Shown piece after piece: positions 12,568 through 32,000 of a DNA stretch of 32,000 nt; within the stretch, counting starts at the first letter, position 1, and each line of letters begins with the position of its first letter. A program made the translations under genes and the position numbers. The DNA lies in NCBI RefSeq assembly GCF_000400465.1, contig NW_008806276.1, positions 510,001-542,000 on the forward strand, given 5' to 3'. Source of the stretch: Wallemia ichthyophaga EXF-994. Its lineage: Eukaryota; Fungi; Basidiomycota. The notes below the pieces were generated by a model. That model made no database searches. It was not told the DNA's origin and was given only the letters and a program-made list of their open reading frames with translations.

Positions 12568-12617
12568 CGTTGTTGGTTGTCGGAGATGGAGATGGCTCGT
12601 GTATTCCAGCGACGACG

Positions 12618-13886
12618 ATGCAAATTATAAAATCTGGATTAGAGGCGCATTTACATAATTTCCATTTGGATTTGATAGCCGGTGCTTCCATCACTCTTTG
12701 GCTGCCTTTTCATGCTCTTGGTGGTGATGCGGCACACGAGGAACACAACGCACACAACGCACACAACGCACACGACACTCGCAGCCTCACTGAGAGCGTA
12801 CTCCACAATACCCCCCACTCCGGCAACCGTGATTGGGAAGCCTTCGTCGACGCCTACATGGCCCTCCTACACTCCCACCCCGCGCAGACTTGGCCAGCCA
12901 CAGCGCGGTGCTACACGACGCTAACGACTCTCTTTATCCAGTGCACCAGCGCCGGCAGTACACAAACCACCCCTGCTCTCCGCCTCCTCACGACGTTCCT
13001 CCCGAGACTGGCAGTGCGCACCAGCCACGCAGCGGCGAGCCAAGCGGCGAGTCAGCTCAGTCGTGCGCTAGCAGTGACGAATGTGAACATAGCACAGCGA
13101 CGCACACTCCTCGTACACATCACCAACATGCTCGCGTGGACCTATTTCAAGCTGCACAGACTCCATTCCCTCCCTACGGCCCTCAAAGCGGTTATTCCAT
13201 TGGAGGTGGACGGCGCACATGCTCTCAATTCCAACTATTCCCGCGCTGATGTCACCACTTACCGCTATTGGCGCGCTCGCTCTCTCCTCGCCGAGTGGAA
13301 GGTGGGCGCTGCGTTCACCCACCTCGAAGCGGCATACAGGGGGTGTCTTAGTTCTGCACAGACACACTCACACGCTCGCTCTGTTTCAAACAGACGTCGC
13401 ATCGCCGCGTATTGGCTGGTCACTGCTCTCATCCAGCGCAGATGCCCCACGTACACCCTCCTCCAGCGCAACGAGCTCGAGTGGCCGTTCGCGCAGCTGT
13501 TCGCGCACACGCGCAAGGGCGACGTGCGTCGTCTGTATGCTGCGCTCAACCGCCCAGATGTGCGCTCCTTCTTGATCAAGATGGGTGTATATACCATGGT
13601 GCGGGAGAAGGTGGAGTGCGTTGCACACACAGCTCTGCTACGGCGCACACTCAGGCTTTACATGCAGCTGAAAGGAACAGCCACTCCGATTATTCCCCTT
13701 GCCGTGTTCCTCAGAACCCTCCAGATCGCTCATCCAGACGAACCGTACACCCTCGACGTGGACGACGCGGAGGCTGTCGTCGTATCTCTCATCGATCAGG
13801 GCCTCGTCGGCGCTAGCATCCAGCATAGCTCGCGCACGCTCGTCTTGGCCAAGAGCGACAACAGCGCGTTTCCGCGGGCGGTGTAG
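12618..13886 (+). CDS. PCI-domain protein of the PCID2/Thp1/CSN12 family
   Basis: VTTYRYWRARSLL...AFTHLEAAY.GC...NRRRIAAYW...P...LL...GDVRRLYAAL...GVYTMVREK...EAVVVSLIDQGLV follows the PCID2/CSN12 layout. First plausible ATG is at 12618. Confidence 0.75.
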   Translation: MQIIKSGLEAHLHNFHLDLIAGASITLWLPFHALGGDAAHEEHNAHNAHNAHDTRSLTESVLHNTPHSGNRDWEAFVDAYMALLHSHPAQTWPATARCYTTLTTLFIQCTSAGSTQTTPALRLLTTFLPRLAVRTSHAAASQAASQLSRALAVTNVNIAQRRTLLVHITNMLAWTYFKLHRLHSLPTALKAVIPLEVDGAHALNSNYSRADVTTYRYWRARSLLAEWKVGAAFTHLEAAYRGCLSSAQTHSHARSVSNRRRIAAYWLVTALIQRRCPTYTLLQRNELEWPFAQLFAHTRKGDVRRLYAALNRPDVRSFLIKMGVYTMVREKVECVAHTALLRRTLRLYMQLKGTATPIIPLAVFLRTLQIAHPDEPYTLDVDDAEAVVVSLIDQGLVGASIQHSSRTLVLAKSDNSAFPRAV

Positions 13887-14020
13887 TGTGTATATAGTAA
13901 AATAGAATAAAATAGATTGCACTGTTGTACTCGTAGATGTAGTTGTTTTTTCGTTTGACATTTGTTTGCGCTCACCTGCGTGTCAACATCTTCTCGCTTC
14001 CCAAACGCCTTCAGGAGAGG

Positions 14021-15437
14021 ATGATCGATTTAGTTTTACTGCAGGAAGCCAAAGGTGAGAGAGGCGTTGAAGGAAGCAACGACGCAACTGACACACGCAC
14101 CCACCACAGGCGGAAATCCAGAGCAAGTCCGCGAATCGCAGAGGAAACGCTACGACAGTGTGGAGCTGGTGGATGAGGTTTTAGGGCTATATGCAACGTG
14201 GAACGCGCTCAATTTCGAGTCGCAGCAGCTCAACCAGCAGATAAACAGTACTCAGAAAGCCATAACGGCCAAGAAGAAGGTCAAGGAGAGTGCAGACGAT
14301 GAGCTAGCCCTGAAGAAAGAGCTAGATGGGCGTGTACCCACATTGAAGCAGCAGACAGCGGCAGCCGAGCAGCATATGAAAAGCAAAGCTGTACAGATTG
14401 GCAATATAGTTGGTCCAGCTGTGCCCATCCACGACGACGAAGAGCACAACGTTGTCGTTCGCACATGGCACCCACACGGTCCCAATGCTGCGGTGGAGAA
14501 GAAAGCAGGTGCACTACCTCACCACGAAGTACTCATGCGTCTTGACGGATTCGATCTCGAACGCGGTCAGAAAATAGCTGGTCACCGCGGGTACTTCCTT
14601 CAGGACACAGCTGTTGATCTCAACCTTGCACTCATTTCTTATGGCCTCGATTTCCTTCGCAAGCGCCAGTACCGCAAGGTTATGACGCCTTTCATGATGC
14701 GCAAGGACATGATGAGCAGGACAGCCCAGCTCGAGCAGTTCGATGAGGAGTTGTACAAGATCGACGATGGCGGAGAGGATGACAAGTATCTCATCGCCAC
14801 TTCCGAGCAGCCGATCAGCGCTATGTTTGCAAACGAGTGGTTCGAGTCACCAAAAGAGCAGCTGCCAATTAGACTCGCTGGATACTCCACTTGCTTCCGC
14901 AAAGAGGCGGGAAAACATGGCAAGGATACCTGGGGGATTTTCCGCGTTCACCAGTTCGAGAAGATAGAGCAGTTCTGCGTTACCTCCCCTGAAACATCTT
15001 GGGACGTGTTCAACGAGATGGTCGAGAATAGTGAGGAGTTCTACCAGTCCTTAGGCATTCCTTACAGACTCGTAAACATTGTCTCTGGAGCCCTCAACAA
15101 CGCCGCCGCTCAGAAATATGACCTCGAGGCGTGGTTTCCGTATCTCGGCGAATGGAAGGAACTTGTCAGCACTTCCAACTGCACTGACTACCAGTCGAGG
15201 AGCTTGGAAGTGAGACACGGGATCAAGAAACAGGGCGAGACCAACAAAACTTACGTACACATGCTTAACGGGACCATGTGCGCGACTGAGAGAGCCATGT
15301 GCTGTCTTGTGGAGAATTGGCAAACTGAAGATGGCCTTGTTGTCCCTCCTGCCCTGCGCAGGTACATGGATGACAGGGAATTCATCCCATTCTGCAAAGA
15401 TGTCCCTAAAGCCAAGGTGAACAAGTCTAAAAAGTAA
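14021..15437 (+). CDS. SES1: Cytosolic seryl-tRNA synthetase; intron 14055-14109
   Basis: Spliced N-terminus MIDLVLLQEAKGGNPEQVRESQRKR. Also YLIATSEQP, motif 2 FRKEAG..GIFRVHQFEKIEQF, ELVSTSNCTDYQSR and motif 3 HMLNGTMCATERAMC. Confidence 0.97.
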
Positions 15438-15520
15438 GAAAGTTTAATTATAAGAAATAAGGGTACAATGGATGCATGTTTCTTTCACAATAAATAGTTG
15501 ATCGTGTCTACCGCGTACGT

Positions 15521-16420
15521 CTAGCGCTGCACGGTGCCTTCAAACCAGTTGCTGATCGACGGCAATCTAAATGCCGGGGGAGTAGATGATGCTGGGGGTT
15601 GTGATTGTGTGTGAGTGTGTGTATGTGTGTTTATGTGGCCGTGTACCGGTGTGTACTGCTGACCGATAAAAGAAGATACTGAAGAAGTGGGAATAGTTTT
15701 GAGAGGGGAAGGTGAATGTACTGGTTTGTGTACTGGTGGGGATGTATTCGTTGATGTTACTCTAGACGCTGCTACTGCTGGTATACCACCTGTACTAATT
15801 TTCACACTATCCTGCGACAAGCTGTGACCATCTCTCTGGCTATCGATAGATGAAGCCGGGGAATGCATACTCTTCCCACTTCCAGCACTCTCATTCGACA
15901 ACTTGCGTCTTTTGAATCTGTCTCAGTCAGCCAATTAAACTCCGACGTACGAAAACATTCAAACACACCCTGGACTTGGTCCTCTGCGTTTCTGGACACG
16001 CGTGTACTCGCACCCGACGTGAGCGTTCACGCAGCGCGAACACGCCTTGGTCACCGTGGGCGGGTGACCATTCAGATCGGGTACTATGTTTCCATCGCAG
16101 CGCAATTTCTTGTGCGTGCATCTGTCACATGCCCGGGTCACTCTGCTGATTGGCTGCTTGGATTGTTCTGGTGTGGGTGGTTGGAGGTGTTGTATGTGTG
16201 GCTGCTGCTGTGGCTGTTGTGGCTGTTGTGGCTGTGGCTGTGGCTGTGGCATTGGCCGTGGCTGCTGTGTTTGCTTCTCCACTACATCCACACCCACTCC
16301 CCCTTCATTCAATATCGAGGCTGGGAAACTGAACTTCTGTGGCTGGGCCGGTGCTGGTGCCGGTGCTGGTGCTGGTGTTGACGCTGTAGCTCCCGCTTTA
16401 CTCTCCACTAACCCCAACAT
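15521..16420 (-). CDS. Zn(II)2Cys6 transcription factor, about 282 aa; intron 15918-15968
   Basis: RACDRCTHKKLRCD..CSRCVNAHVGCEY followed by KRRGP. Splicing gives GPSPGFKRRKLSNES. PA and PQ repeats; C-terminal LPSI motif. Confidence 0.85.
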
Positions 16421-17799
16421 GATGGTCTATTTCTAAGGCGCTCTTCGGAGTTAATTGATTAGGAAATTAGATTACCAGCCTCGGTCACTGGTCCCCGTCC
16501 TCTGTCATCAGGAATGTCAATCTTGGCGGATTTCGATGGTGGAAGGCGTATCGGTATAGGTTTCCATCTATATCAGTAACACCACCAACCGCTCCCCTTT
16601 CTATTCCGGTATTTTCTGTTGCTAAGCGAATCGAATCTCAATGGAAGAAGTTTTCGGAATAATTGTCACACACGCATGGGTGACATATGAACGTGGTGTA
16701 TGCATCTAAAGAATGTCTAAATTCCTATTCCCCTCTTTCCCTGCTTACCCCTGCTTACCTCAGCAGACACAGCAAATCTGCGGACTTTCTCCGCAAGACG
16801 CAGCGTGTATAGAGTACAGATGCTGCTAACGCTGATATCAACAGCCAGCTTATTCACACCTAACCTCCTCTACACCCTTTATACAATTTCTGCTCACATC
16901 ACGCGATCGCCCAGCACGCCCTCCTCAGTTCCACGCCCAGCGTTACTGATTCAGGGCGCAGACTGATTCCGTAACTTGTAACTATCACTAAGCCCATTTT
17001 ATTTTTATCCGTTTGTGCTGAGTTATTTACGTACGTGGATGTATTTACGTGCGCGATCATTATACGTACGTGTATTCAATCGCTTTATTTTAAATAGCCG
17101 ATGTTTGTATGAGCCAGTTGTAGAGTCTGCTCAGCCAGCTCAATCTACCCCACGAGAACAGCACTCATCACTCACCATACACCCTTTCCCCTCGCAAATA
17201 CCACATTTCAGCTTGTTCCGTGTACGGCTGATCGTGCCTCACCCCACGTCATCTGAATGCTCGGACGTCGGCAGATGATTTATGATTGTGTAATAGGCGG
17301 GCGGAGTGCGGATTGCGGTGTAAATAGAGTATTTTTATATTGGTGAGTGGTGAATGCGGTGAGCATATAATCCACCACGCGTAGACGCCTCGTACACCCA
17401 CTTCACGCACCTTGGATAATGATCGACGGGGTATCCTCACGCGACGGTGGTATGTGGTATGTAGTATGTAGTACGTAATTTGTGTTGCTGTAGAAGGCCT
17501 ATCGCACATCACTCAATTTAATAACCGCGTTAATGTAATTGATCCAAAATAGCACATTCCTCGGTCAGCAATGCGACATTGACGGCGTGATAAATGGGGG
17601 TGATATTGATTGAATTATAGATATCACAGTGTTCTTGTTGTGAGCAGGAGCAGTCCATTTTGTGTCTTGCTTTCTCTTCCTATTTCACTCCTCATGGTAA
17701 TGCTCCCTGTGTATCACTTCCTGCAGACGTTTTATTAACGCTTTGCATACAACCCACTTTTGAGTCTCAGTAATGATATTTGTACGCGACTACGTCTCA

Positions 17800-18483
17800 A
17801 TTTGCATTCGGGTGTGCCTTCGTGCTAGCATATTTGATGAGATGTGGATGGATATCGCGAGCTCAGAAGGAGAGCAACACACTACAAATTAGAAATGTCT
17901 TATTATTTGTGCACTCCATTCAAAGTCAGCTCATTAAATCAGAGATCAAATCCCTTTGATAGGGTTTTCGGCCAAAAAATAAAGTGCAAAAATATCCGAC
18001 AGCTATGAGATTCGAACTCATGAACGCAATGCGCAATAGAAGGTTAATCCAAAGATAGCAATCTATCGCCTTAACCACTCGGCCAAACTGTCACTGACTA
18101 CCAACCCATTCGCAACTATCATTACCGTACCAAGCACTAATCATCCCTCAACCTGAAAATGTTAACTATACTCCTTTTCCTTTCTCGCTTCCACTAAATT
18201 CAGCACCCCCTCCAACTCCTCATCCTCTATTAAGTATTGACCCACACACTTTAAACATCTATCGTCTTAACAAGATAATCAGTTTTCATCATAATCATCA
18301 TCAATATCCTTTCTTTTGGTGATCAATAGCCTAGGTGCATTTCCCGTGCCTAATCACTCCACCATAATCCCAAAGGTACTTCTTCTACAATGCTCAAAGT
18401 CCATCTGCATCACCGTGGTCTGCTACAGCTCCTCAAACTCCGGATTAGTAGCAGATACCTGTTAATTGTAACAACAGCTGCAT
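17800..18483 (+). repeat. Left arm of a 684-bp inverted repeat (partner 26005-26688)
   Basis: Base-by-base comparison with the reverse complement of 26005-26688 is colinear with no indels (paired coordinates sum to 44488). I found two mismatches: 17872/26616 and 18274/26214. Confidence 0.97.
17997..18092 (-). tRNA. tRNA-Ser(GCT) with 14-nt intron
   Basis: Acceptor stem GACAGTT/AGCTGTC, A box TGGCCGAGTGG, anticodon stem ATAGA/TCTAT with GCT, long variable arm GCGC-ATT-GCGT, B box GTTCGAATC, discriminator G73. Mature length is 82 nt, and a T5 terminator follows. Confidence 0.95.
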
Positions 18484-18818
18484 ACAAGCATGTGATAATC
18501 CGTAATTTCATCCTATTTAACATCTACTGGCTTGCAGCGTCGCCTACTTCCCAAAATGAAGTCATGTCCAAAATAAAGTTATGGTAAGCCGTTTAAAGTG
18601 GAGTTTGATTGAGAAGTACCCACACGCATCTCGCTCTCTACTCAGTATTCAAACCACGACTGCAACACCTATACTGCTATATGTTAGTTGGAAGATGAAT
18701 TGCCCAAACTAAGAGTAAATTACAGTATGAAATAACTAAAATTACAATCCCATGTATTACAACTAAGCCATCTGTTCTGTGTCTTGTTAGCCCTCTTGAC
18801 CACACGCAATCAAGCTCG

Positions 18819-20448
18819 ATGGGATCAGGATCGCAGAGACCACCACCCAACACGAAGTCCAATAAATGTAGTATGAGTAGCATCATAGATATATACAAGG
18901 CGCCTTCTACATTTCTGCCTCGGCTCTTTGACTATTTCAATTGCCGGAATTCTGGAATCGACGTATGCAGAAGTGGAAACGCTATAAGAGTAAATAAGAA
19001 CATGGTGTGTCATACCTAATCGTCCTATCACCCGTCTTATTGGATACAGCTGCGGGAATATTTGCGTTTAGAGCTTCTAAACGATGGCATCATTAAAAAG
19101 CACACGAGTTCAGGCAAGAGCGACTCAATCGTTGAAAAGTCTTTTAACGCGGTGCTGAAAAGCTGTCAGATGTACTTTAAGCTTATTGATAAGTGCGCGT
19201 TGGAATGTTGCATAACCATGAACAAAAAAGCTGATGGTTTCCTCACTTATGAAACCAAAAAGGGTCACAGTCCAAATAATGTGAGTGAAGCATACATATC
19301 TATGTAAAACTCATTGCAACAAGAAAAACGCCTTCCTCTTAAGCCCAAGGAATGTCGGTAATGATGGCTACAATGATATTTACAATAACTACAATGGATC
19401 TAAAAGGAAGTTAAACAATTTATCAAATAGTGGACAATTTGATCGTGATAACACCAACAAAGTAGATGAGACAATAGAGACTGAAGACGAAGTAGACAGA
19501 ATACTCGAAGAACAACCAGTAGTGCAGAAGAGGCGTAAAAAGGGCAGGCCCAGAAATGTATCGAGAGAAAGAGAAGCACAGCAGGCGTCACACGGGGAGC
19601 CGCAGCCATTAGTTGAAGCTGAAGAGGACGAACCACCTACAAAATCAGAGGAAGCAGAAGATGAGAGATTAGCTAGGCGGGAAAGAAGAGCATCTCTAAA
19701 TGCAGATACTACACGACGTGAGAATACAGCGTCGAAGCCATCCAAAATTATTATAAAAAATCCATACAGGAAGCAAGAGGAGCAAGTGAAGCAAGAAGAG
19801 CAGGAAATAGAAAGCCTCGCCAATTTAAATGATTCAAATGCAACTCAGCATCTTCTACAGCCTCCACCTCAACAGGCGCCACCAGCTACTCCTCCGGAAA
19901 TCGCAAAAGCAAGAGAAGAAGTAAAAAGGGCCGAGGAAGCAAGCGAAATGGAGCTGAAATTGCTATACGAGCAAATTGAACAACTCAAGCAGGCACGGCA
20001 AGCACAGGAAGCACAGGAATCACAGTGGCTTAATCAGCGAAACAAGCAATATGAACCTACTAAGTTAAGAGTTCGCAAATCTCAATTACTAGTAAAATTA
20101 GATCTGAAGAGGATTCAGTCGAAATCTAGTACACCGTCTCATGCCCCAGCCAAAGCGGTTGGTAACAAGGAAACCAAAAAAGCACAACTTGCACCATTGG
20201 CAACAACATCAGCGAGCTCATCGCCACTGTCAGCACCCCCATCACTTCCAACGATATCTTCATCTTCATCCGAAGCTTCAGATAATGAAGAAATTAGATC
20301 GGATGAATTCCACATCAACTCCGCCATTGCATCTCCCCCGCATAGACGACTTGAATCACCTGATATAACACGTCTATCGCTTTCACCGGTTGAGCCTATC
20401 AGTTCATACGAATCACAGCAAAGCAGAATATTAAACATAGACAAGTAA
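18819..20448 (+). CDS. Orphan putative DNA-binding protein, about 513 aa (exons 18819-19004, 19050-19280, 19324-20448): HSF-like N-terminal domain, AT-hook, coiled coil
   Basis: Two phase-0 introns (45 and 43 nt) link three ORF-track fragments. AT-hook-like KKGRPRN; E/Q-rich coiled coil; S/P-rich tail. The true start may lie upstream, because further splice-like sites occur at 18584-18790. Confidence 0.6.
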
Positions 20449-20564
20449 TAAACGCATGTATTGTAATACCAGTTTCATTTATACCCTCTTGAGCGCATTT
20501 CACAAAGTACGCCGTTGATCTCATTCTAGTAACAGTACGTTCATCTTGAGTTTTTTTAACGGGA

Positions 20565-23440
20565 ATGGTGAGCGCAGCAAATGCCTAAAGATAAATACTA
20601 AAAGATACTTAGAATATCCCTCCGAAGCAGTTTGAGCTTAATAGACCGACGATGCTTCCACCAATAAACTTACCACCGATACAAGGCAGCGACAGGCCGC
20701 ATCTTCCACCCATAAGCGGTAACCAGCAGTCCAGGGATCTCCCAATGCCATTCCCTGCTCAAAACAACAAGATGGGTGTACAAGCTATTCTCTCCGAATC
20801 GTCATATCAACCTCCACAGACGTATCCGTACTCTCAGTCTCCTAAATATTTCCAGAATGAGCCTAATTACTCTCCTAACTACCCTCAAAGACCACTCCCA
20901 GCGAGTCATGCCCAGTCACCTGTTCCGTGGTCTTCTGGCGCAATTTCCAATCAGCCACTGCCACCACAATCACAGTCTCCTGTCTATTCTAACCAATCTA
21001 ACCCTCCTCCGCCTTTTCCACATACTCAGCCGTCGTTGTTTCAACAACCCCAATATGATGCCGCACAAGCTCAACAATTCACTGCACCACGCTCTCGACC
21101 TGAGTACGGCAGTATGGATGAAGTCGTCGCTCGTCAGCAAGCTCATATTTCTCGGTCGCAGACCACTGACAGTCTTTCGCGCTCAACTACATCCAAACGC
21201 AAGCGTGATCAAGCACCGGCATTACAAGGAGAAGAGCCACTCTATCAAGATCCAACTCATAATTACAATCAACAATTCTCTCAAGAAACAGCCCAAGAAG
21301 AAGATGAAGATGTTGAGTATCAACCACAAAGACAGAGACAGGTTCTCGAAGAGCGAGAGCGCCTGCCGTCTAAAGTCAAAAACGCACACGATCGTGAGCG
21401 TGAAGCCCTCTTTGTGTATAAGGACTTAGACGTTTATGACGCTCAAGGTTCACTAAAGGTTGCTTCGGATGGCGTACATGATGTCTTATCAAAAACTCCG
21501 CGTTTTTCTATAGGCCGTCACGTCTATCAACCTGCTGAACTTGTAGATTTCTACCCACACCAAATTGGTGGTGTTTTTGAAATGTACGTACCGGGTGCTT
21601 GGTTGGGTGACAATTGGGCAGTACGAGAGCTCCTACCACAAAAGAATGGAGACACTGTAGAACTAGCACCAAAAGTACGACATGTTAGAGGCAAGACTAA
21701 TGGATTAGCTCTGACGGATTTGGATGCATTGGATGAACGTCGTATTTGGGGTACGGATGTGTATACAGACGACTCTGATCCTATTGCAATAGCAGTGCAT
21801 CTCGGCTGGCTGTTTGATGCAAGTGACAAGTCGTATGATAGAAGGTCGCTGGTGGGAGCCGGCAGACCTGCAGAGGGAGAAAAAGTCGATGATATTATTG
21901 AAGATGCAGACCTCGTCTTGGTCTTTAGAGTCGCTCCTAGACTAGTCGCCTATCATTCTTCAATGCGTCACAGACTGTGGTCTCGAGGCTGGGGAAATCA
22001 GCACGATGGATTTAGTTTGGTCTTAGAGGAATGCAAGCTCATACCGAAAGATAAGACTAATGTGATTAGACCGTCAAAGCAACTCCGTAAAGCTAGAATT
22101 GCGCTCATCGCTCAAGCGAGAAAGGCTATTATAGACTCACCAAGTGTTCAAGTTAAGGAGAATGATGTTGATGCTGAAGCTGCCGATGAGAATGATGTGT
22201 GGAAACTATTGTCAGAAGATCAGAAAAGGCCTGAAAAGAACAAATTCAATAAAAACACAAAAATGATCAGGAGAGGTTGGTGTATAGATTGTTGTTACGT
22301 TAGTTTGCTAACGCCATACCAGGTGATCGGAGATTCAAGCGTGTGCAAAAGGAGGAGAGTGAGATTGAGCTCGAGACCCAACTTGCCATTCAACAAGAGA
22401 AAGAGCAGAAGAGACTGAAAGAAGATGAGAAAAAAAAGGATGAAGATGAGAAAAAGAAGGAGGAAGATGAAAAGAAAACAGATGAGGATGAGAAAAATAG
22501 GCTTGAGGATGAACAGCGGAAAGCAGAGGAAAGTGGAAAAGGGGCGCTGGAAGAGCAAGGTAAAGGGATTGAAGACACGCAACACAATGCAGTTGAGATG
22601 GTCGAGAGTCAGACGAGTGATGCGCCACAACTTTCTCAGGAGCAGGGGCAGCATACACCACAACAGCCACAAGAACGTCAGGTGCGGAAAGAGCAAGCGA
22701 ACGCCGTGCAACAAGAACAATCGTTACAGGAAAATGTTTCTGAGCAGCAACAGGAAGACAAGAAGCCTGAGAAATCAGAAGTGGAATTGCAGCAGTCAGA
22801 TAAACAAGAGCAAGAGCAAAAGCAAGACCAAATTGAAGGCGGAAGGCTGGCTGCTCAGCAACAAAACAATGACTCTGTGTCAGCTCCAGAAACTCAGTCA
22901 ACACAGGAGCTTTCTTCAAATCAGGCTGTCGATTCAACTCATTCGACACAGCTACAGCAGCTTACCAAAGCAGCTAAACCTGAAGCAGACCATCCATCTG
23001 CTCCAGAGCCTGCCCAAGCATCCCAGGATGTGTCCATGGAAGTGGATACCCAGAACACTCAACAGCCAGAGACAGACGTGAAAACTTTCTCGGTCACAGA
23101 AGCGCAACCCAGGCAAACGTTCACGATCAATCAGAATCCTTACGACCCTGTGCAGATGAATAAATCACATGCCCAATCGACTCCTCAGCCGGGAGCTGAA
23201 GCGCCACAGATAATGTTCGTGAACCACCATACAGCGGGAGATCATCAAAATTGTTCGTTTGAGTTGTCGCAGGTGCAAAGTGACGCTTCTGCAACGCATA
23301 CGCCACGAGCACAAGATAGCGCATTTGTCAAACAAGAGGATGATTCACAGTCCACACAAGCAAGCTTCAGCATAGCCTCTGAGTCTAATGGCAACGACAA
23401 CACGACATCACAACTGCCTTCACAAAATGAAAGTCTGTGA
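20565..23440 (+). CDS. RXT3: Rxt3-domain protein (Rpd3L HDAC complex subunit-like), about 927 aa; introns 20568-20612 and 22276-22322
   Basis: RRIWGTDVYTDDSDPIAIAVHLGW and SRGWGNQHDGFS are Rxt3-domain signatures. A 47-nt GTTGGT..CTAAC..CCAG intron joins the two ORF-track ORFs in frame. The first exon is probably an ATG only (alternative start 20652). Confidence 0.75.
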
Positions 23441-23717
23441 GAATTTCCTGTAACGACACTCATCTCAGATATTAGATACCAAACCGGTCGACGCATCCAA
23501 CACAACCACATAAGCTGACGCAGATATGCAGCGTCTTACCACCTCTACCACACTAACTTCACTGAGCCAAGAAAACTAATTTATAAACCTTGTTATATGT
23601 AGCAAACAACAAGTAATATAACCAACAATTGTATACTACTTCAAAGAATAATGGATATTCATGAAATTCACATGGTCTTGCTAATGACATTGCATCATTC
23701 GACGAAACATCTTTTGA

Positions 23718-25793
23718 TCACTCTATTTGTCTAGCTTTCTTCTCTTCTTCTTTTGCTCTCTCTTGTTCTTCGATTCCTGCAGCGACCTTAGACGCGCCGT
23801 CAAATCCACGGGCGTAGAGGGCGTGCAACCATTTAGACCATATGACATATGTTGCTTTCACATCTTGCAGACCTGCTAGCGTTGAGAAGGCTACAGATGT
23901 ACGAACGTGTCGCAAGTATTCTTTTAAATACGACCAGAATATGGATAATGAGACGCCAGTTTCACTCCACCGCCTCGAGATGTCTTTAAGTGTTGCTCTG
24001 TGGTTTGATTTCTCGCAATATTGTCCGATGATTAAAAAGACGCGCGTTGGGCCATGGGTAGTGTGTAGGGATGTGTCCAAATGTCTAGAATATGTGAGAT
24101 AAAGTTCAAAGGCTCAATATCATCTCCTCTCACCTGGTCAAGTCGTTCAATTTGAGAACCATCAACAATCGTCTTGGCAAATTCCTTAGCAGTTCAAATA
24201 CACTACTCAGCAATCCCTCTTTTGTAACCAACGCGCTTCTCAGTCTTTCAACATCACTAGAATTTCCAGCTGGTGTGTTGTCGAGAATGCCGCCAGAACG
24301 CTTGTGCTTGCGGGGACCACCTTTCACCTCATGATCGTAGGCACCTTCAAGACCTGCCTTTCCTGTGATAGCAGACTCGAAAATGGCTGTAAGCATTTGA
24401 GTAAGTGTGGTTTAGGTCGCACTCCACCCACCATACATATCCTCATCGATATTGCCAACCAACTTTGCGTAATGCCTCCTCTCCTTGAAAGTGGCTTTGG
24501 AAGGTGGCTTCATCAGCGAAAGCCAGAATCTAGCATAGTTTACTCGAAGGTCATCCGATAAATCAAAGTAAAGACCATGGTCAAGGAGGCAGATGTCAAA
24601 GTTGTACGGCGACCGCGACTTCTTGTGAGCAGGTCTGATGAGCAGGTTACCTGGGTGTGGGTCTGCATGGAAGAAGCCATTGATGTAGACCATCTCAGAG
24701 AATAGGCTGGCAAGCTCTTTAGCTACTTGATTTCTGTCAATATTGTGCTTTTGGAGGAAGTTCAAGTCATCAGGTCTGGCGCCTTCTATATATTCCATGC
24801 ACAGAGCCAGCTTATGTGACCAAAGGAATTCAGGTATGTAGAGTGTTGTACTTGACTTGTCGGCGAAGTCATTCCTGCATCTATTAGCGTTGTTGGACTC
24901 ATGCCTAAAGTCCAATTCGAGTGGAAGATTCACAGCCATCTCATCCGCCAGCCATGTGAATTCGAACTCGGGGAAGAGTCTGGGGCGTTATTTAGTATGA
25001 CGTAAACGAGAAGCCGAGTAGCTCACTTTTTGATTCCCTTGCTTATGAGCTGCACAGTCTTGATGTCTATCTCAGCATACTCGTCTAAGCCTGGATGCTG
25101 TACCTTCACGGCGACTTTCTGGCCTGTTGATTTATCATTTGCGACGTGTACCTGAGCCAGTGAAGCGACACCGATAGGCGTAGGATCAAATGTCGTGAAA
25201 AGCTCCTCGGTGGATTTACCAGTGGCTATTTTAAGAATCTTATTAACATCATCGATCGACGATGGATTGCATTGGTCTTGAAGAGGACGCATTGTGCTTG
25301 TCCATTCCAGCGGGAGGAGAGCAACACTGGAAATATGCTGACCAAGCTTGATGAAAACACCTCCGTTAGCCTTTAAGACGTTGAGCACCCTCTCAGCACA
25401 CCTCTTGTGACAACCAGCTAAACTGTCCCATTTTTCGTCATCTGAGGCGTAAGTCCTACCAAGCGTGAGCTTGTAGTCTGTTGCATTGGCGACGAATGCC
25501 TGAGCGCATCTTGCACACCTCTGAGCCGCCAAAGACGTGTGCTTGAATGTATCGCTGGTGTTATAAAGTATGAATGAACTTGGGAGGAATATCAGGAGTA
25601 CGATGATCGATGTTGGTAATTTCGATAAGAATTCTCTTTTCTCATGGCGATTGTGATGGGTGCTGCTCCACCTTCTCAATGGAGCTTGGTGGCGTAGGAA
25701 ATTGTGTGCGGGAGTTTTGCTGGCCGCTCGCGTATTGCTGCATTTCAACCCTCGTAGCGATTGCTTCGCCTGGTTGAACAGCACTCGCTGCAT
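23718..25793 (-). CDS. ABC1/UbiB atypical kinase (ADCK1/Mcp2-like), mitochondrial; introns 24980-25026, 24387-24431, 24085-24133
   Basis: GGVFIKLGQH (KxGQ), VASLAQVH, VAVKVQHP, LPLELDF, HADPHPGNLL and LLDHGL motifs. Arg-rich, acid-free presequence MQRVLFNQAKQSLRGLK. Confidence 0.9.
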
Positions 25794-26004
25794 TTCTAAG
25801 AGTTGGTCGTCAAGATGAATCGCCTTTTGAAGAGCAACGACTAACATCAACTAAGTTAAATTAATTAAGACTTGGAAATAAGCGTGTTGATGCTGGTGAG
25901 GTGGCTCTGGTGTGTATTTGTCGTGTGTTGCCACCACCACTACCAGCTACTGGGACTCAATTTGAGTAGAATGGGCGATGAGTAGGAGCATAGGAGGGTT
26001 CATA

Positions 26005-26688
26005 ATGCAGCTGTTGTTACAATTAACAGGTATCTGCTACTAATCCGGAGTTTGAGGAGCTGTAGCAGACCACGGTGATGCAGATGGACTTTGAGCATTG
26101 TAGAAGAAGTACCTTTGGGATTATGGTGGAGTGATTAGGCACGGGAAATGCACCTAGGCTATTGATCACCAAAAGAAAGGATATTGATGATGATTATGAT
26201 GAAAACTGATTATATTGTTAAGACGATAGATGTTTAAAGTGTGTGGGTCAATACTTAATAGAGGATGAGGAGTTGGAGGGGGTGCTGAATTTAGTGGAAG
26301 CGAGAAAGGAAAAGGAGTATAGTTAACATTTTCAGGTTGAGGGATGATTAGTGCTTGGTACGGTAATGATAGTTGCGAATGGGTTGGTAGTCAGTGACAG
26401 TTTGGCCGAGTGGTTAAGGCGATAGATTGCTATCTTTGGATTAACCTTCTATTGCGCATTGCGTTCATGAGTTCGAATCTCATAGCTGTCGGATATTTTT
26501 GCACTTTATTTTTTGGCCGAAAACCCTATCAAAGGGATTTGATCTCTGATTTAATGAGCTGACTTTGAATGGAGTGCACAAATAATAAGACATTTCTAAT
26601 TTGTAGTGTGTTGCTTTCCTTCTGAGCTCGCGATATCCATCCACATCTCATCAAATATGCTAGCACGAAGGCACACCCGAATGCAAAT
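26005..26688 (-). repeat. Right arm of the 684-bp inverted repeat (partner 17800-18483)
   Basis: Reverse complement of 17800-18483 with two mismatches found. Confidence 0.97.
26396..26491 (+). tRNA. tRNA-Ser(GCT) with 14-nt intron, identical to the copy at 17997-18092
   Basis: GACAGTTTGGCCGAGTGGTTAAGGCGATAGATTGCTA[TCTTTGGATTAACC]TTCTATTGCGCATTGCGTTCATGAGTTCGAATCTCATAGCTGTCG, followed by a TTTTT terminator at 26496-26500. Confidence 0.95.
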
Positions 26689-26922: not shown

Positions 26923-28305
26923 CTATAGGGGTGGGAGAGGGAAAGATTCAGGATTTACACCGGCATCCTTCACACATCTATCCCAGTAAGCTCTAAAGAA
27001 TGGTGTTAACAGACATGGCACACCGACACACCAATACACCGACATACCTTCTCAGCTTGGTATCTTCAGCCTGCTTGCCGACAGACTGAGGCTGAGTCTT
27101 TTCGTTCCAGAAAGCTCCGCGTGGCTTACCCTGCAATGAACAAGTAGCGAGGAATAGAGCCGTCTTCGCACCTTCTGGTGCCGAGATGGCGAAGGTGTTG
27201 ACGAGCATGTTCACAGGAACGCTGAAGACTTTGAGAGCTTTGTATTCTTCCTTGTTTGAGATGGTCGTCTTGACGAACCCAGGGTGGTAGTTGGCGACAA
27301 AAATCTTCCTGTATTTGACATTAGGGTGGTTGTCGAGACTGGTTTGAAGTTCTCGACAAAGGATGGTGATGACTAAGGATTTGTGTGAGATTTGAGCTGC
27401 GAATGAGAAAGAAATATCCACCCACGCTTCTTTGAATCACTGTACAGCGCGAAAGAGTTAAGAGCATAATTTTTGTATTTCCGCACATCACGCAGCGGAG
27501 TGCGGGGATTCTCGGAGGGAGCGTTAGGAATGTCAGTGAGTTTTGCACCGTTTGATGAAGTGACGATGATACGTGGATCGTCTGACTCTGAGAGAGCTGG
27601 CAGAAGATGCTCGATGAGTGCGAGGTGTCCAAGAGCGTTGCACTGTTGAGCAATGAGTGATGGTCTTGAATGGTTGTGCCCAATGTACACCCACCTGATA
27701 CGTCATTTCAAAATTATCCTCAGTCGTTGACATATCCGCATTCGGAACGATCAGACCAGCGTTACAGAAAAGTAAATCACACTTTCTGCAGCTGGGATCT
27801 TGATCAGACCACTGATCGCCAAATGACTTTATGGATTCGAGTGAAGAAAGGTCTATTTTGATGATAATGATTTCAGTGTCGCCCGTATTCTTCTTCTCAA
27901 TCTCAGACTTTGCTTTCTCTGCTTTATCAAGGGACCGGCATCCCATTACTAGTCTGCCAATATTATTCTCCACGAGCCATTCGCATTTAGCGAAACCGAG
28001 TCCTTATGGGTGATTTAGAAACAGTGGCAATTTGCTGGATGACATCACACACCTGCGTTCGCACCGATACAAATGGCTGTCTTCCCTTGAACAGATTTGC
28101 CGTTGAGTTCCAAGTTTCTTGTGGGCTGTTAGTTAGGATATCATTGGGACAACTCTGGGAGTGTACTACTAACTTTAATTTCGCCATCGAAGTAACAAAA
28201 CTTGCTTATGATATTGGAATTGAGAAGGCAATTGACAAGTATGTGAATATTTTCCACGACTTAGATTTCTACCGGCTATTTTACATCTCAAACCAAAGCG
28301 GCCAT
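26923..28305 (-). CDS. Short-chain dehydrogenase/reductase (retinol dehydrogenase/WWOX-like), multi-exon; N-terminal exon(s) uncertain
   Basis: Spliced GKTAICIGANAGLG (GxxxGxG), DLSSLESI, LFCNAGL, RIIVTSS, catalytic YSDSK and YHPGFVKT. Last exon AYWDRCVKDAGVNPESFPLPPL* ends at 26923. Confidence 0.85.
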
Positions 28306-28326
28306 GATAGCAGCTACTGATTAGTG

Positions 28327-29047
28327 ATGGAGTACATCTTTAACAGCAATTCTCCTTTTACAGTTTTCATTGGCGGATACATTTACAAGCTCGATAAGAC
28401 GTACTCAAGGCGAATTCAGCAGTATTGAGTGATTGCTTTGATATCTGTGATGCTCGGATGGATCAACCTCAGGAAACGATAACTTTGGAAGACAATCACT
28501 GCTTTACTACTTGTTGTGGAATAGTAAACGACATTAAGCCTTATTATCATGTAATTAGCCGTTTAGTTGAAAATTCCACCCTTTGGTTTCTGTTTACAGA
28601 TTGTCTGAATTCTTACAAGACAGTGCAACTCTTTTAGAATTAGAAGAGTATCTGCTAAGGCGTAAGCTCTTTACTAGTCCTGAGAAGCTCAGCTTTTGCG
28701 CCAGATTCAGTCTCAGTAGTGAAAACGTAGATAGAATTCTCAAACAAAAACTGAATTCAGCGCGTATATTACAATGAAATAGTCGTGACTTTTTCGATAT
28801 CAGTGTTGAGAATACTGAGAGCTTGGTGTTTCTACCGACAATCCAAGCACAGCTAGATACCACGGTGTGTGATGGGATATGGTACACTCAACGCACACTA
28901 CTCACATGAAGACAGCTAAAGCGATCCAACATGTGCAATGAAGATGGATATGAAGGTAAAAAGTACACATTCAATCGCCAACATTGTAAAAAATAGAGAT
29001 GGAGAGAAATACTCAAATCTGCGTCTTGTCAATGGGTATACAAATAA
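28327..29047 (+). pseudogene. Probable disrupted gene with a BTB/POZ-like N-terminus
   Basis: MEYIFNSNSPFTVFIGGYIYKLDK continues in the -1 frame as DVLKANSAVLSDCFDIC. Intron-like segments at 28551-28599 and 28865-28915. In-frame TGA (28775) and TAG (28994) interrupt coding-like text. Confidence 0.3.
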
Positions 29048-29087
29048 GTTAGGGATCAGGTCATTAATATCAACTCAGTGTACTTGG

Positions 29088-31036
29088 TTATGCATATTCA
29101 CTTTGAACCAATTCAACTGCTCTGTCTATGCATTCGTCAACTGTCCACTTTGGTTCTCTCCTCGACAATTTGAGACTAAGAAGATCCCCAACTTCGTCGC
29201 ACGCGCGTAACAATTCGTCGATATCCCCCTTGGTGTGTGAAGACGAAAGACAGAATCTCACTCTACCACTGGTCAATGGTGTGGCTGGGTAAGCGACGAC
29301 TACAACAACGATAGAAGCAGCACCCGGTGTGAGTCTGTCCATCATTGTTCTTGAGAAGAGCGGTAGTTTTGCTGGGTTGAATATAAACAACGGCACTATT
29401 GGCGAATCCCTTGAACCAGACATGATGAATCCCATCTTGCGCAGTGCTGATGATAAATAACGAGCGTTAAACGCCAGTCTTCTCAATCTATCTTTGCCTT
29501 CTGTACCATCCAGTAGATCTCTTGGAAGGGTCATCCAATGCGGCAAAGTGTTGTGAGTGACTGGACCTGGATGTGTGTCCTCACTTATATGTTCACCACC
29601 TTCGACAAACTCTTTGACGCCTGTGATGGAAGCGAGCGAACTGATAATCTGGGTGAGTACAGGCGGAGACATGGATTCAGCATAAGTCATTCCATGACTC
29701 CTCTGTCTGATTCTATTCACCAAATCTTGATCACCTGCGATATAACCACCAGCAGCACCAAATGACTTTGTAACTGTACCCATAAGTATATCAATCAAGC
29801 GAGGATTTATTCCAAAGTAGTCACACACACCTCTACCGTGTGGACCGATAGCACCAATTGAGTGAGCTTCATCGATATAGAGGTAGAATTTGTACTTGTT
29901 CTTCATTTCCATAATTGCTGGAAGATTGACTAGTGTACCTTCCATTGAGTACAACCCTTCTACAATTAGCAATATCTTCTTCCATGGACGGTGTGTGCGA
30001 GGTTGGCCTTGGGAGATGGTCTCTCTAAGTAAATTCTCGAGGTCTTTCATGTCGTTGTGTTTGTACTGTCTTACACTGGCACCAGACAGACGCACACCGA
30101 ATCTAATTGAGCTGTGGTTGAGTTCATCACTAATGACTAAACAGCCTTTATTAACGAGTGCAGGGATAGTAGTTGAGTTCGTAGCGAAACCCATTGATAT
30201 CAGCATAGCGTCCTGGGTGCCCAGGAATTTAGCCACCAGCTTCTCCGCATGATGGTGTAAATCGAGTGTACCACCTTCAAGACGAGGACCACCAGCAGAA
30301 ATGCCGTACCTCGAAATGCAGTCTTCAACAGCATCTGCGCAGCCGCCTCTAGCTTGGGCGAAACCAAGGTAATTGTATGATGAGACGTTGAGGCATCTTG
30401 TGTTGGACCCCGAGTAGAAGTAGGTGTTGTTGTAATCATCCGAGTCTCTATCGAGTGTGAGTATCGTACGACCAGGCACGCCTGAGTGGAGGGTGAGAGG
30501 AGGTAGGTCCAAATAAAGCCAGACTAACCAGTCGTTGGTCTACTAAAGCAGTCATCGATACGCAACTTAAGCCTACGCGTATAGAAGCTATCGAAATCGG
30601 ATAAAAGAGCAGCGTAACCATTATTAGGCATGAGATGCTTGTAATGCTTATTGAACATGCGTTTACCAAAGAAATCCCTCATATGGCCAATAACGATGAG
30701 TAAGACGAAGCTTACGTACGTAGATATCAATATGTAATAACTGGGATCCTCTACTTCTGCGATTGTGGAGTCTTCGTTGGTATTGTGACTGCTTATAAAT
30801 CGAAAGTCGTCGTTGTTGCAGATACCGTACTCGTCGTGGCTAAGTTGAGATTTCGTGGGCACTTCCAACTTATTCTGGAGATATGATCTTGCGTCGGGTA
30901 GATTGTCTGCGGATGTCGTTGAGAGAGATGGCATCGATGGTCGCGGATAAAGGAACGTGGATTTCGCGTTTACATTTCCAGCTGGGGACTTTTCTAGCTG
31001 CGTACTCCTCAGCCTATTTGAACTATTTACTTGCAT
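29088..31036 (-). CDS. LCB2: Serine palmitoyltransferase subunit 2; intron 30482-30528
   Basis: SDFDSFYTRRLKLRIDDCFSRPTTGVPGR, SYNYLGF, SDELNHSSI, EGLYSMEG, DEAHSIGA and the PLP-lysine motif GTVTKSFGAAGGY. Confidence 0.95.
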
Positions 31037-31712
31037 TTTTTGTTTTTTTAGATAATGAGTGTTCAGGACACTGATGTGCGCAGGGCGCTGAGCGAGGGTA
31101 GTTTGCGCCAATCAAATCTTAAAATTCATATTTTCGGGATGCAGTTGTGTGGCGAGTATACACAGCAGTCTGCTATATCGCTCTGCTCGGCCGCACTCGG
31201 CTTTTTTAATCGCACGTATCCATTCCATTGACGCCGAAAGCAACTCAAACGAGGCATATTAATTCCTCCGTGTAAAAATATAATTCTCATATATTTGCAC
31301 ATACTCTGTATACTGAATTAATTTTATCCATTTTTTTCAAGCCGTTTGCAGTATGTTTGAGGTGTATCGTGCGTATTTAGAGTTCGTGTTTAGAGTATTT
31401 TTGGAGTGCATTGAGTGTCGTTACATACAAATGTAGCTAAGTCTTACTCATGGTGCTCTTATCTCTGGTAAAGGACATGAAAATTTTCCAAAAGAAATAA
31501 GCTGAGAGCAAGTGGAAATCTGCTACGTTGGAGATGTAGCAACATTTATTACAGTCCCTCCTCATTATCGACTCTCAAAATATTAGGATAACCCAGGCTC
31601 TCCCAGATTCGTCACTTTTTCACACACAGCGGCGATACGATGGAAAATCAAGACAGCTACAAAGACCCATTTGAAGTGAGTTCGTAGAAATTTCACGTTT
31701 ATTTCAGCTCAA

Positions 31713-32000
31713 ATGCCAAAAAAGGACGCCAAAAGTCCCTTTCCTGGCCACCCAGGTGAATCTGTCGAGAGATCGGCACCAAGCAAGGGCAAGGGAGATG
31801 TGTTGCAGCCAAGCAACCAGAAGATGCAGCCGAATGATACCGATGAGCTTATCGTGAAAATGATCAAGAAATCTTCATCAACCGCTGAGAGGCTCAAACA
31901 ACTCGATGGATTGCTTAAAATGGTTAGCGGTGTATATCCCAGCTGAGCTACATTCTTAACTCACTAACCACCCAGGCAATTGAGAAAATCCTGCTCGAGA
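31713..32000 (+). CDS. Hypothetical protein, 5' part; intron 31923-31975
   Basis: ORF from ATG 31713. A 53-nt GTTAGC..CTAAC..CCAG intron continues the frame as LKMAIEKILLE off the window end. No family recognised. Confidence 0.5.

What the first reader, a model, noticed from the sequence alone, without database searches (positions are those of the whole stretch)
17800..26688. 7.5-kb three-gene block bracketed by 684-bp inverted repeats that each carry a tRNA-Ser gene
Seen: two arms (17800-18483, 26005-26688) in opposite orientation, with sharp ends, no indels and only two mismatches. Each holds a complete tRNA-Ser(GCT) pointing outward. There are no terminal inverted repeats, target-site duplication or transposase, and the tRNA sits mid-repeat, unlike a SINE head. 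About 390 nt upstream and 200 nt downstream of the tRNA are conserved, whereas dispersed tRNA copies normally share only the gene itself. Established analogies: IR-mediated flip/flop inversion of MAT regions in Ogataea and Komagataella; TFIIIC/B-box-containing IR-L/IR-R boundaries of the S. pombe silent mat region; tRNA boundaries at S. pombe centromeres. Inference: this may be an invertible cassette and/or a tRNA-insulated chromatin domain enclosing a putative transcription factor, an Rpd3L-type subunit and a mitochondrial kinase. The alternative is a recent inversion with duplicated breakpoints.
Basis: partly seen in the sequence, partly recalled or inferred. Interest (0 to 1): 0.85.

Follow-up and report, generated by a model that had tools for sequence, protein, structure and literature searches.

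The report
Inverted tRNA-Ser repeats flanking an inverted block
In the salt-loving fungus Wallemia ichthyophaga, two near-identical back-to-back copies of a serine tRNA gene bracket three ordinary genes; the pair is old, the copies keep overwriting each other, and the segment between them has flipped at least once in evolution, which is a clean example of a known way genomes rearrange rather than a new kind of switch.

Summary
Arms 17800-18483 and 26005-26688 are a 684-nt inverted repeat with two mismatches and sharp ends. Each carries an outward-facing, intron-containing tRNA-Ser(GCU). The window is an exact piece of Wallemia ichthyophaga EXF-994 scaffold KE007226.1 and is not the MAT locus. 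The same block (unknown gene X, Rxt3, ABC1 kinase) is bracketed by two outward tRNA-Ser(GCU) genes in W. hederae and W. mellicola, so the pair predates these species. The two copies match within W. ichthyophaga and within W. mellicola (introns 14/14 and 41/41 nt) but differ between species; W. hederae keeps two types (31/15 nt). That is concerted evolution by gene conversion. Against W. hederae, both flanks are collinear and the block is inverted, with breakpoints at the tRNAs; W. mellicola shares the W. hederae junction, so the inversion is derived in W. ichthyophaga. Eight other strains' contigs end inside the left arm, so the repeat is real and species-wide, but no assembly resolves orientation within the species. 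Best reading: an old inverted tRNA pair kept alike by gene conversion that mediated an inversion by homologous recombination, as reported for Saccharomyces. An active flip-flop or a tRNA-insulated domain is untested. The inversion call depends on 2-kb mate-pair scaffolding of the reference.

The parts
17800..18483 (-). Left arm of the 684-nt inverted repeat, on the Zn-cluster/SerRS side and next to gene X
   Evidence: contigs of eight other W. ichthyophaga strains end inside it, at 17917-18092
17997..18092 (-). tRNA-Ser(GCU) with a 14-nt intron, transcribed leftward, away from the block
   Evidence: Rfam RF00005 49.7 bits; ARAGORN with introns allowed
18189..18299 (-). Conserved ~111-nt non-coding element, on the tRNA's strand, with its proximal end 96 bp upstream of the tRNA 5' end
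   Evidence: blastn to W. mellicola at E=4.5e-13; nhmmer hits in the window, W. mellicola and a fourth lineage; distance measured; not coding and no stable fold
19218..20448 (+). Gene X: 395-aa low-complexity protein in the reference annotation, with no known domain and a conserved KKGRPRN motif
   Evidence: reference gene model; tblastx collinear with W. hederae and W. mellicola inside the block; no Pfam or PDB match
20652..23440 (+). Rxt3-family gene (Rpd3L histone deacetylase complex subunit family), 913 aa in the reference model
   Evidence: PF08642 at E=6.6e-14; 80% identity to W. hederae and 72% to W. mellicola; gene model
23718..25850 (-). ABC1 atypical kinase gene with several exons, 644 aa in the reference model; its 5' end lies about 155 bp from the inner edge of the right arm
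   Evidence: PF03109 on two exons; gene model
26005..26688 (+). Right arm of the inverted repeat, on the SDR/aminotransferase side and next to ABC1
26189..26299 (+). Second copy of the conserved non-coding element
   Evidence: nhmmer
26396..26491 (+). tRNA-Ser(GCU) with a 14-nt intron, transcribed rightward, away from the block

Best explanation
This is an evolutionarily old pair of inverted tRNA-Ser(GCU) genes around a conserved three-gene block (X, Rxt3, ABC1). The two copies exchange sequence by gene conversion (concerted evolution). In W. ichthyophaga this keeps 684 bp 99.7% identical, covering the tRNA, 197 bp downstream of it and 391 bp upstream including a conserved element. Because the repeats are inverted, an occasional crossover between them flips the 7.5-kb segment between them. 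At least one such inversion became fixed on the W. ichthyophaga lineage. Shown: the repeat; the tRNAs; their presence in three species; similarity that is high within a species and low between species; the inversion relative to both flanks. Inferred: that the mechanism was homologous recombination between the arms; that the arm sequence derives from the ancestral ABC1-side copy; that the arrangement has no programmed function beyond supplying two tRNA-Ser(GCU) genes.
For: (1) The pair is ancient. W. hederae (L001 7083-7195 on the minus strand, 16120-16216 on the plus strand) and W. mellicola (L002 6953-7075 minus, 18094-18216 plus) also have two outward tRNA-Ser(gct) genes around Rxt3 and ABC1, and gene X is collinear inside the block. 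(2) Concerted evolution. Exons are invariant in five of the six copies. Introns and flanks match within W. ichthyophaga (14/14 nt, identical) and within W. mellicola (41/41 nt, one difference) but differ between species. W. hederae keeps two types (31 and 15 nt), and one of its copies has a compensatory change at acceptor-stem pair 2:71. Repeat extent differs by species: 684 nt at 99.7%, about 250 nt at 92-95%, and tRNA only at about 78%. (3) Arm-to-arm divergence is 0.29%, within the 0.14-0.47% seen between strains. The G at 17872 is private to the reference strain's left arm, since eight other strains have A there. (4) Inversion. Window 11484-16498 and 26923-31924 align to W. hederae on the minus strand, while 20611-25606 aligns on the plus strand. 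W. mellicola shares the ABC1-to-Zn-cluster/SerRS junction with W. hederae, so the W. ichthyophaga state is derived. (5) The repeat is real and species-wide. Six strain contigs stop 118-119 nt into the arm, one less than the k of 120 used for those assemblies, and two stop at 18069 and 18092 (assembly method). (6) The arms are not a mobile element. (7) Precedent. PMC2817429 summarises Kellis et al. [quoted passage not shown]
Against: The block's orientation in W. ichthyophaga comes from one assembly (EXF-994: SOAPdenovo, 500-bp and 2-kb Illumina libraries). No long read or independent spanning contig confirms it, and all other strains' contigs break in the arm. Gene conversion does not by itself explain how identity spread over 588 bp of flanking sequence with sharp ends. 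That requires an ancestral repeat longer than the tRNA. This is supported only indirectly, by copies or relics of the conserved element on both sides in W. mellicola and on the ABC1 side in a fourth lineage. The genome-wide copy number of the arm could not be checked. No orientation polymorphism was seen among the four W. mellicola junction-spanning contigs examined (L002, L003, L004, L006).
Confidence: 0.7

Rival explanations
1. Active flip-flop: the 684-bp arms recombine often enough that both orientations coexist within cultures or segregate among strains, possibly with a regulatory effect, as in the inversion-based MAT switches of Ogataea and Komagataella.
For: The arms are long and 99.7% identical. 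The block has flipped at least once in evolution. Sequence exchange between the arms is recent. Every short-read assembly breaks at the arm, so nothing excludes a mixture.
Against: The block and its flanks hold no mating-type or other switch-like genes. Inversion through arms that contain whole tRNA genes changes no coding sequence or proximal promoter. No site-specific recombinase is nearby. The reference assembler resolved one orientation without gaps (no N in the window). W. mellicola contigs that span a junction all show one orientation. A contig break is what any repeat longer than k produces and is not evidence of two isomers.
Confidence: 0.1
2. tRNA-insulated chromatin domain: the two outward tRNA genes bind TFIIIC/Pol III and act as boundary elements that isolate the X-Rxt3-ABC1 block, and that function is why the bracket is conserved.
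For: The tRNA-block-tRNA unit is kept in three species even though the outer flank on one side was replaced in W. mellicola. Gene-poor spacers of 0.5-1.5 kb surround the tRNAs in a compact genome. tDNA boundary activity is established in S. cerevisiae and S. pombe (general knowledge, not tested here).
Against: No chromatin or expression data were available. Conservation of two tRNA genes is explained by their need as tRNA genes. The enclosed genes are ordinary housekeeping types. Synteny of five small genes within one genus is not unusual. W. hederae lets the flanks diverge completely, so no extended boundary sequence is conserved.
Confidence: 0.08
3. The repeat arose in one step as a by-product of the inversion, through staggered breaks or template switching that duplicated one breakpoint region, and was not produced by gene conversion of an older repeat.
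For: The lineage with the inversion is also the one with the long near-identical repeat. The arm ends are sharp. Both W. ichthyophaga tRNA copies carry the intron type found in only one of the two W. hederae copies.
Against: Both tRNA positions were already occupied before the inversion. Duplicating one breakpoint would therefore leave three tRNAs unless one was lost precisely, and only two exist. W. mellicola shows the same within-species homogenisation without that inversion. The junctions show no microhomology.
Confidence: 0.1
4. Assembly artefact: the arm is duplicated in error, or the block is scaffolded in the wrong orientation in EXF-994.
For: EXF-994 was assembled from short reads at K=21 and depends on 2-kb pairs to bridge 684 bp. 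All other strains break in the arm.
Against: Two tRNA copies at these positions are confirmed independently in W. hederae, W. mellicola (several strains) and the JGI reference. The two arm mismatches show that the arms were assembled separately. The contig-end pattern in eight strains fits a true repeat. A 2-kb library at high coverage can orient the block. A duplicated-arm artefact is effectively excluded; a wrong orientation is not.
Confidence: 0.07

Closest known systems
Evolutionary inversions flanked by oppositely oriented tRNA genes in Saccharomyces (Kellis et al. 2003, as summarised in PMC2817429), and the enrichment of tRNA genes at yeast evolutionary breakpoints (Gordon, Byrne and Wolfe 2009, PMC2675101)
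   Same: A chromosomal segment inverted between related species, with a tRNA gene at each breakpoint in opposite orientation and of the same isoacceptor. Ectopic homologous recombination between the tRNA copies is the presumed mechanism.
   Different: This case is in a basidiomycete (Wallemiomycetes). No Ty/LTR element was recognised at the site. The shared sequence extends far beyond the tRNA (684 bp). The same tRNA pair is conserved around the same block across the genus and shows clear concerted evolution.
Recurrent inversions mediated by inverted repeats that are homogenised by gene conversion, for example the FLNA-EMD region of the eutherian X chromosome and the inverted repeat of plastid genomes
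   Same: Inverted repeats kept near-identical within a genome while diverging between species. The crossover outcome of the same recombination flips the spacer. Repeat boundaries shift between lineages.
   Different: The scale differs (0.7-kb arms against 11 kb or more). Only one inversion event is documented here. Coexistence of both isomers, as in plastids, is not shown.
Flip-flop mating-type switching by inversion in Ogataea polymorpha and Komagataella phaffii (described in PMC5499181)
   Same: Inverted repeats flank a segment whose inversion is mediated by recombination between them.
   Different: In those yeasts the repeats flank two MAT loci, and inversion moves one next to a centromere or telomere that silences it. 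Here there are no MAT genes, no evidence of a silencing neighbourhood and no evidence of induced switching. The Wallemia MAT locus is elsewhere.
tDNA chromatin boundaries (the S. cerevisiae HMR tRNA-Thr barrier; S. pombe centromeric tDNAs and the IR-L/IR-R B-box boundaries; from my own knowledge)
   Same: Pol III genes or TFIIIC sites bracket a domain on both sides.
   Different: Nothing indicates that the enclosed Wallemia genes lie in, or beside, heterochromatin. Boundary activity was not tested and cannot be tested by sequence alone.

Membership tests
Inversion by homologous recombination between inverted tRNA genes | Two copies of the same tRNA gene in opposite orientation at the two ends of the segment | tested here: met
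   tRNA-Ser(gct) at 18092..17997 (-) and 26396..26491 (+)
Inversion by homologous recombination between inverted tRNA genes | The segment is inverted relative to both collinear flanks in a related genome, with breakpoints mapping to the repeats | tested here: met
   blastn of the window against W. hederae: flanks on the minus strand, block on the plus strand; the strand switch falls between 16498 and 20611 and between 25606 and 26923, and both intervals contain an arm. Caveat: the reference orientation rests on 2-kb pairs.
Inversion by homologous recombination between inverted tRNA genes | The repeats existed before the inversion, so they are its cause and not its product | tested here: met
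   Both tRNA copies are present at the block ends in the uninverted W. hederae and W. mellicola
Concerted evolution of repeat arms by gene conversion | Paralogous copies within a genome are more alike than orthologous copies between species | tested here: met
   Introns and flanks match within W. ichthyophaga and within W. mellicola and differ between species; W. hederae keeps two types
Programmed invertible switch (flip-flop, MAT-like or recombinase-driven) | Both orientations present within a strain or population | not testable with these tools
   All eight other W. ichthyophaga assemblies break in the arm; no reads were available
Programmed invertible switch (flip-flop, MAT-like or recombinase-driven) | Inversion changes expression, through a promoter, gene or silencing context at a boundary, or a dedicated recombinase is present | tested here: not met
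   The arms contain whole tRNA genes plus identical upstream sequence, so local context is the same in both states. The window has no recombinase and no MAT genes.
Transposon or composite element | Terminal inverted repeats, a target-site duplication, or a transposase or reverse transcriptase | tested here: not met
   None at the arm edges or in the block
tDNA chromatin insulator pair | TFIIIC/Pol III occupancy with a chromatin-state transition at the tRNA genes | not testable with these tools
   Needs ChIP or expression data

The most novel reading that the evidence does not exclude
The tRNA-block-tRNA unit is a maintained functional module. The two arms, each made of the conserved upstream element, a 96-bp spacer and the tRNA-Ser gene, would act as paired Pol III boundary or co-regulatory elements for X and ABC1. 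They would recombine often enough that both orientations coexist in W. ichthyophaga populations, giving a reversible structural polymorphism in a fungus long thought to be asexual.
Probability: 0.07. Interest if true: 0.75.

Novelty: new member of a known kind. Interest (0 to 1): 0.38.

Why it matters
This is a well-resolved natural example, outside the ascomycete yeasts, of how a pair of inverted tRNA genes behaves over long evolutionary time. The pair persists around the same genes across a genus. It is repeatedly homogenised by gene conversion, with repeat boundaries that differ by species. It has served as the substrate for at least one inversion and lies at a second rearrangement breakpoint in W. 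mellicola. That supports the view that tRNA genes are rearrangement hot spots because they act as homologous recombination substrates in their own right, and not only because retroelements insert next to them. On the practical side, it marks a spot where every short-read Wallemia assembly breaks, and where the reference orientation should be verified before it is used in synteny or population analyses.

Tried and rejected
(1) ARAGORN in the tool's default run found no tRNA. This was because of the intron, and Rfam and ARAGORN with introns allowed resolved it.
(2) MAT locus: rejected, since the window has no HD, HMG or STE3 gene and the published Wallemia MAT inversion involves other genes.
(3) Orientation within the species: eight W. 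ichthyophaga strain contigs all end in the arm. A 128.8-kb contig was counted but never displayed; it probably extends leftward and ends in the arm too.
(4) The search for W. ichthyophaga block proteins (Rxt3, ABC1), meant to fetch block contigs, returned none. The look-up of the window's Nop53 ORF found no record.
(5) The metagenome scan for more Wallemia loci found only distant fungi, 64% identity at best.
(6) Conserved element as a coding exon: rejected, because there is no bias towards synonymous changes and the frame is broken by indels in lineage 4.
(7) Conserved element as a known RNA family: only sub-threshold C/D-box hits. As a structured RNA: no support, with z = +1.3 and a consensus energy of -2.4 kcal/mol.
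(8) Homology of the arm flanks to W. hederae flanks, to identify the donor side directly: nothing beyond about 40 bp next to the tRNA.
(9) Gene X as a transcription factor: no Pfam or PDB match.
(10) Genome-wide copy number of the arm: could not be tested, because no searchable fungal genome collection was available.
Full report
**Observation.** The window contains exactly one long inverted repeat, at the coordinates given: 17800-18483 and 26005-26688, 684 nt each, 7521 nt apart. A direct comparison shows two mismatches (17872 G/A, 18274 G/T) and no indels, and identity collapses immediately outside both ends. Rfam places a tRNA in each arm, at 18092..17997 on the minus strand and 26396..26491 on the plus strand, so both point away from the block. 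ARAGORN missed them in the tool's default run. With introns allowed it calls tRNA-Ser(gct) with a 14-nt intron in both. Each arm therefore holds 197 nt downstream and 391 nt upstream of the tRNA. The arm edges have no terminal inverted repeats, no target-site duplication and no junction microhomology, and the arms carry only short ORFs.

**Source and gene content.**
- The genes are fungal and contain introns.
- The Rxt3 ORF is 80% identical to W. hederae and 72% to W. mellicola. The flanking seryl-tRNA synthetase is 100% identical to W. ichthyophaga.
- Window 4021-25437 is an exact substring of W. ichthyophaga EXF-994 scaffold KE007226.1, positions 514021-535437.
- The left flank holds PP1, MBOAT, ribulose-phosphate epimerase, Mre11, MCM5, SURF6, RPN7, Nop53, a PCI protein, SerRS and a Zn-cluster gene. 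The right flank holds a short-chain dehydrogenase and an aminotransferase.
- The block holds gene X (reference model 19218-20448, 395 aa, no Pfam or PDB match), Rxt3 (20652-23440) and an ABC1 kinase (23718 to about 25850).
- There are no mating-type genes. The inversion already described in Wallemia is at the SXI1/HMG/STE3 locus (PMC6738226 and PMC6628117), which is a different place.

**The pair is old.** The orthologous loci of W. hederae (L001) and W. mellicola (L002 to L006, including the JGI reference) have the same layout: two outward tRNA-Ser(gct) genes around X, Rxt3 and ABC1. What varies is how far the repeat extends. It is 684 nt at 99.7% in W. ichthyophaga, about 250 nt at 92-95% in W. 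mellicola, and little more than the tRNA exons (about 78% over 150 nt) in W. hederae.

**Concerted evolution.** Aligning the six tRNA copies shows exons that are invariant in five of the six. The sixth, one W. hederae copy, has a compensatory change at acceptor-stem pair 2:71. Introns and flanks follow the species, not the position:
- W. ichthyophaga: 14 and 14 nt, identical.
- W. mellicola: 41 and 41 nt, one difference.
- W. hederae: 31 and 15 nt, unrelated to each other.

The W. ichthyophaga intron resembles the short W. hederae type, which is the copy at the ABC1 end. So the two copies have overwritten each other independently in two lineages, and W. hederae has escaped this.

Within W. ichthyophaga, arm-to-arm divergence (0.29%) lies within the range of strain-to-strain divergence in the flank (0.14-0.47%). 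The G at 17872 is private to the reference strain's left arm, because eight other strains have A there. Two strains (L007, L008) carry other variants in the left arm. Their contigs run further into the arm, as expected if their two arms differ at those sites.

**Inversion.** Against W. hederae, window 11484-16498 and 26923-31924 align on the minus strand, whereas 20611-25606 aligns on the plus strand. Both flanks are collinear and the segment between the tRNAs is flipped. W. mellicola shares with W. hederae the junction between the ABC1 end and the Zn-cluster/SerRS flank. W. mellicola is the more distant of the two by protein identity (72% and 85% against 80% and 89%), so parsimony puts the inversion on the W. 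ichthyophaga lineage. On its other side W. mellicola has quite different neighbours (BRO1, a 2OG-Fe oxygenase, a methyltransferase). That means a second rearrangement breakpoint also falls just outside a tRNA.

**Is the repeat real, and does it flip now?** Contigs from eight other W. ichthyophaga strains all end inside the left arm. Six end at 17917/17918, which is 118-119 nt into the arm and matches k-1 for the k of 120 used in those assemblies. Two end at 18069 and 18092 (method). The repeat therefore exists across the species. For the same reason none of these assemblies fixes the block's orientation.

The reference orientation rests on a 2-kb Illumina library (PMC3849046). This is adequate in principle but is not long-read proof, and it is the main caveat on the inversion claim.

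In W. mellicola, the four contigs I examined that span a junction agree in orientation. Several strains break at the arms, and one contig (L005, 11,156 bp) is just the block.

**A conserved element in the arm.** Positions 18189-18299 (and 26189-26299) match W. mellicola at E=4.5e-13, even though the surrounding non-coding DNA cannot be aligned. A profile search finds the element in these places:
- both W. ichthyophaga arms;
- upstream of the X-end tRNA in W. mellicola;
- as a degenerate relic upstream of the other W. mellicola tRNA;
- as an extra copy, 88-90% identical to the first, in some W. mellicola strains;
- upstream of ABC1 in a fourth Wallemia lineage (Logan SRR25399871, L016).

It was not found in W. 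hederae. It lies on the tRNA's strand with its proximal end 96 bp upstream of the tRNA. The extra W. mellicola copies join 94-96 bp upstream of their tRNAs. It is not coding, has no stable fold and matches Rfam only below threshold. Its presence on both sides in several lineages suggests that the ancestral repeat was already longer than the tRNA, which would explain how conversion can maintain 684 bp. Its nature is unresolved. It could be an unstructured C/D-type RNA, a cis-regulatory element, or the end of a mobile element that targets tRNA upstream regions.

**Mechanism.** The best-supported account has three steps.
1. An old inverted duplication of a tRNA-Ser unit brackets three genes.
2. 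Gene conversion between the copies keeps them alike within a genome.
3. A crossover between them inverted the block in the W. ichthyophaga lineage.

A single-step origin by breakpoint duplication is unlikely, because both positions were already occupied by tRNAs and no third tRNA exists. Nothing suggests a programmed switch. Inversion through arms that carry whole tRNA genes and identical upstream DNA leaves every gene and proximal promoter unchanged, and the window has no recombinase and no mating-type content. A boundary function for the tRNAs cannot be judged from sequence.

**Comparison with known cases, and novelty.** Inversions flanked by tRNA genes are on record for Saccharomyces (Kellis et al. 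2003, as summarised in PMC2817429). tRNA genes are enriched about threefold at yeast evolutionary breakpoints (PMC2675101). Inverted repeats that are homogenised by conversion and flip their spacer are also well known. This locus is a new and unusually clean member of that kind in a basidiomycete. I found no description of it in the Wallemia genome papers I read, which report only the MAT inversion. Interest is moderate to low. It would rise sharply only if both orientations were shown to coexist or if a boundary function were demonstrated.

Noticed in passing
window 18189-18299 (-) and 26189-26299 (+); L002 7286-7399; L016 345-452: A ~111-nt non-coding element conserved across very divergent Wallemia lineages. 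It sits 96 bp upstream of the tRNA on the same strand and has a conserved RUGAUGA-like motif and an invariant CAATACTT. It is absent from the W. hederae locus. It is not coding, has no stable fold and matches no Rfam family.
   Followed up: partly
L004 1-350; L005 11038-11156; L006 17849-17958 (W. mellicola strains): Some W. mellicola strains carry an extra copy of the element, 88-90% identical to the first, that joins 94-96 bp upstream of a tRNA. It is on the X-end arm in one strain and on the ABC1-end arm in two others. Contigs stop 119 nt into it, as if it were repeated elsewhere. It could reflect exchange between the arms or a mobile element that targets tRNA upstream regions.
   Followed up: partly
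window 14055-15437 (SerRS) and 17997-18092 (tRNA-Ser); L001 19029-21602 and 16120-16216; L002 20884-22339 and 18094-18216: The cytosolic seryl-tRNA synthetase gene lies about 2.5 kb from a tRNA-Ser gene, with only a Zn-cluster gene between them, in all three species. This linkage of an enzyme with its own substrate tRNA may be coincidence.
   Followed up: no
L001 16120-16216 (W. hederae): One W. hederae tRNA-Ser copy has a compensatory double change at acceptor-stem pair 2:71 (A-U to U-A) relative to all five other copies. The two W. hederae copies are therefore diverging independently while both stay foldable.
   Followed up: no
L002 1-6095 compared with window 26923-31924: In W. mellicola the flank outside the X-end tRNA holds different genes (BRO1, 2OG-Fe oxygenase, methyltransferase) in place of the dehydrogenase and aminotransferase. 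A second evolutionary breakpoint therefore maps next to a tRNA of this pair.
   Followed up: partly
window 15959-16436: The N-terminal part of the Zn-cluster gene is encoded by a long CAG/CCG-type low-complexity run (poly-Q/P). Several Logan and strain contigs break there.
   Followed up: no
L016 (Logan SRR25399871, 5593 bp): A contig from a fourth Wallemia lineage, only about 75% identical in DNA to W. ichthyophaga, W. hederae and W. mellicola, carrying ABC1 and part of Rxt3. It may be a species that has no genome assembly in the collections searched.
   Followed up: no
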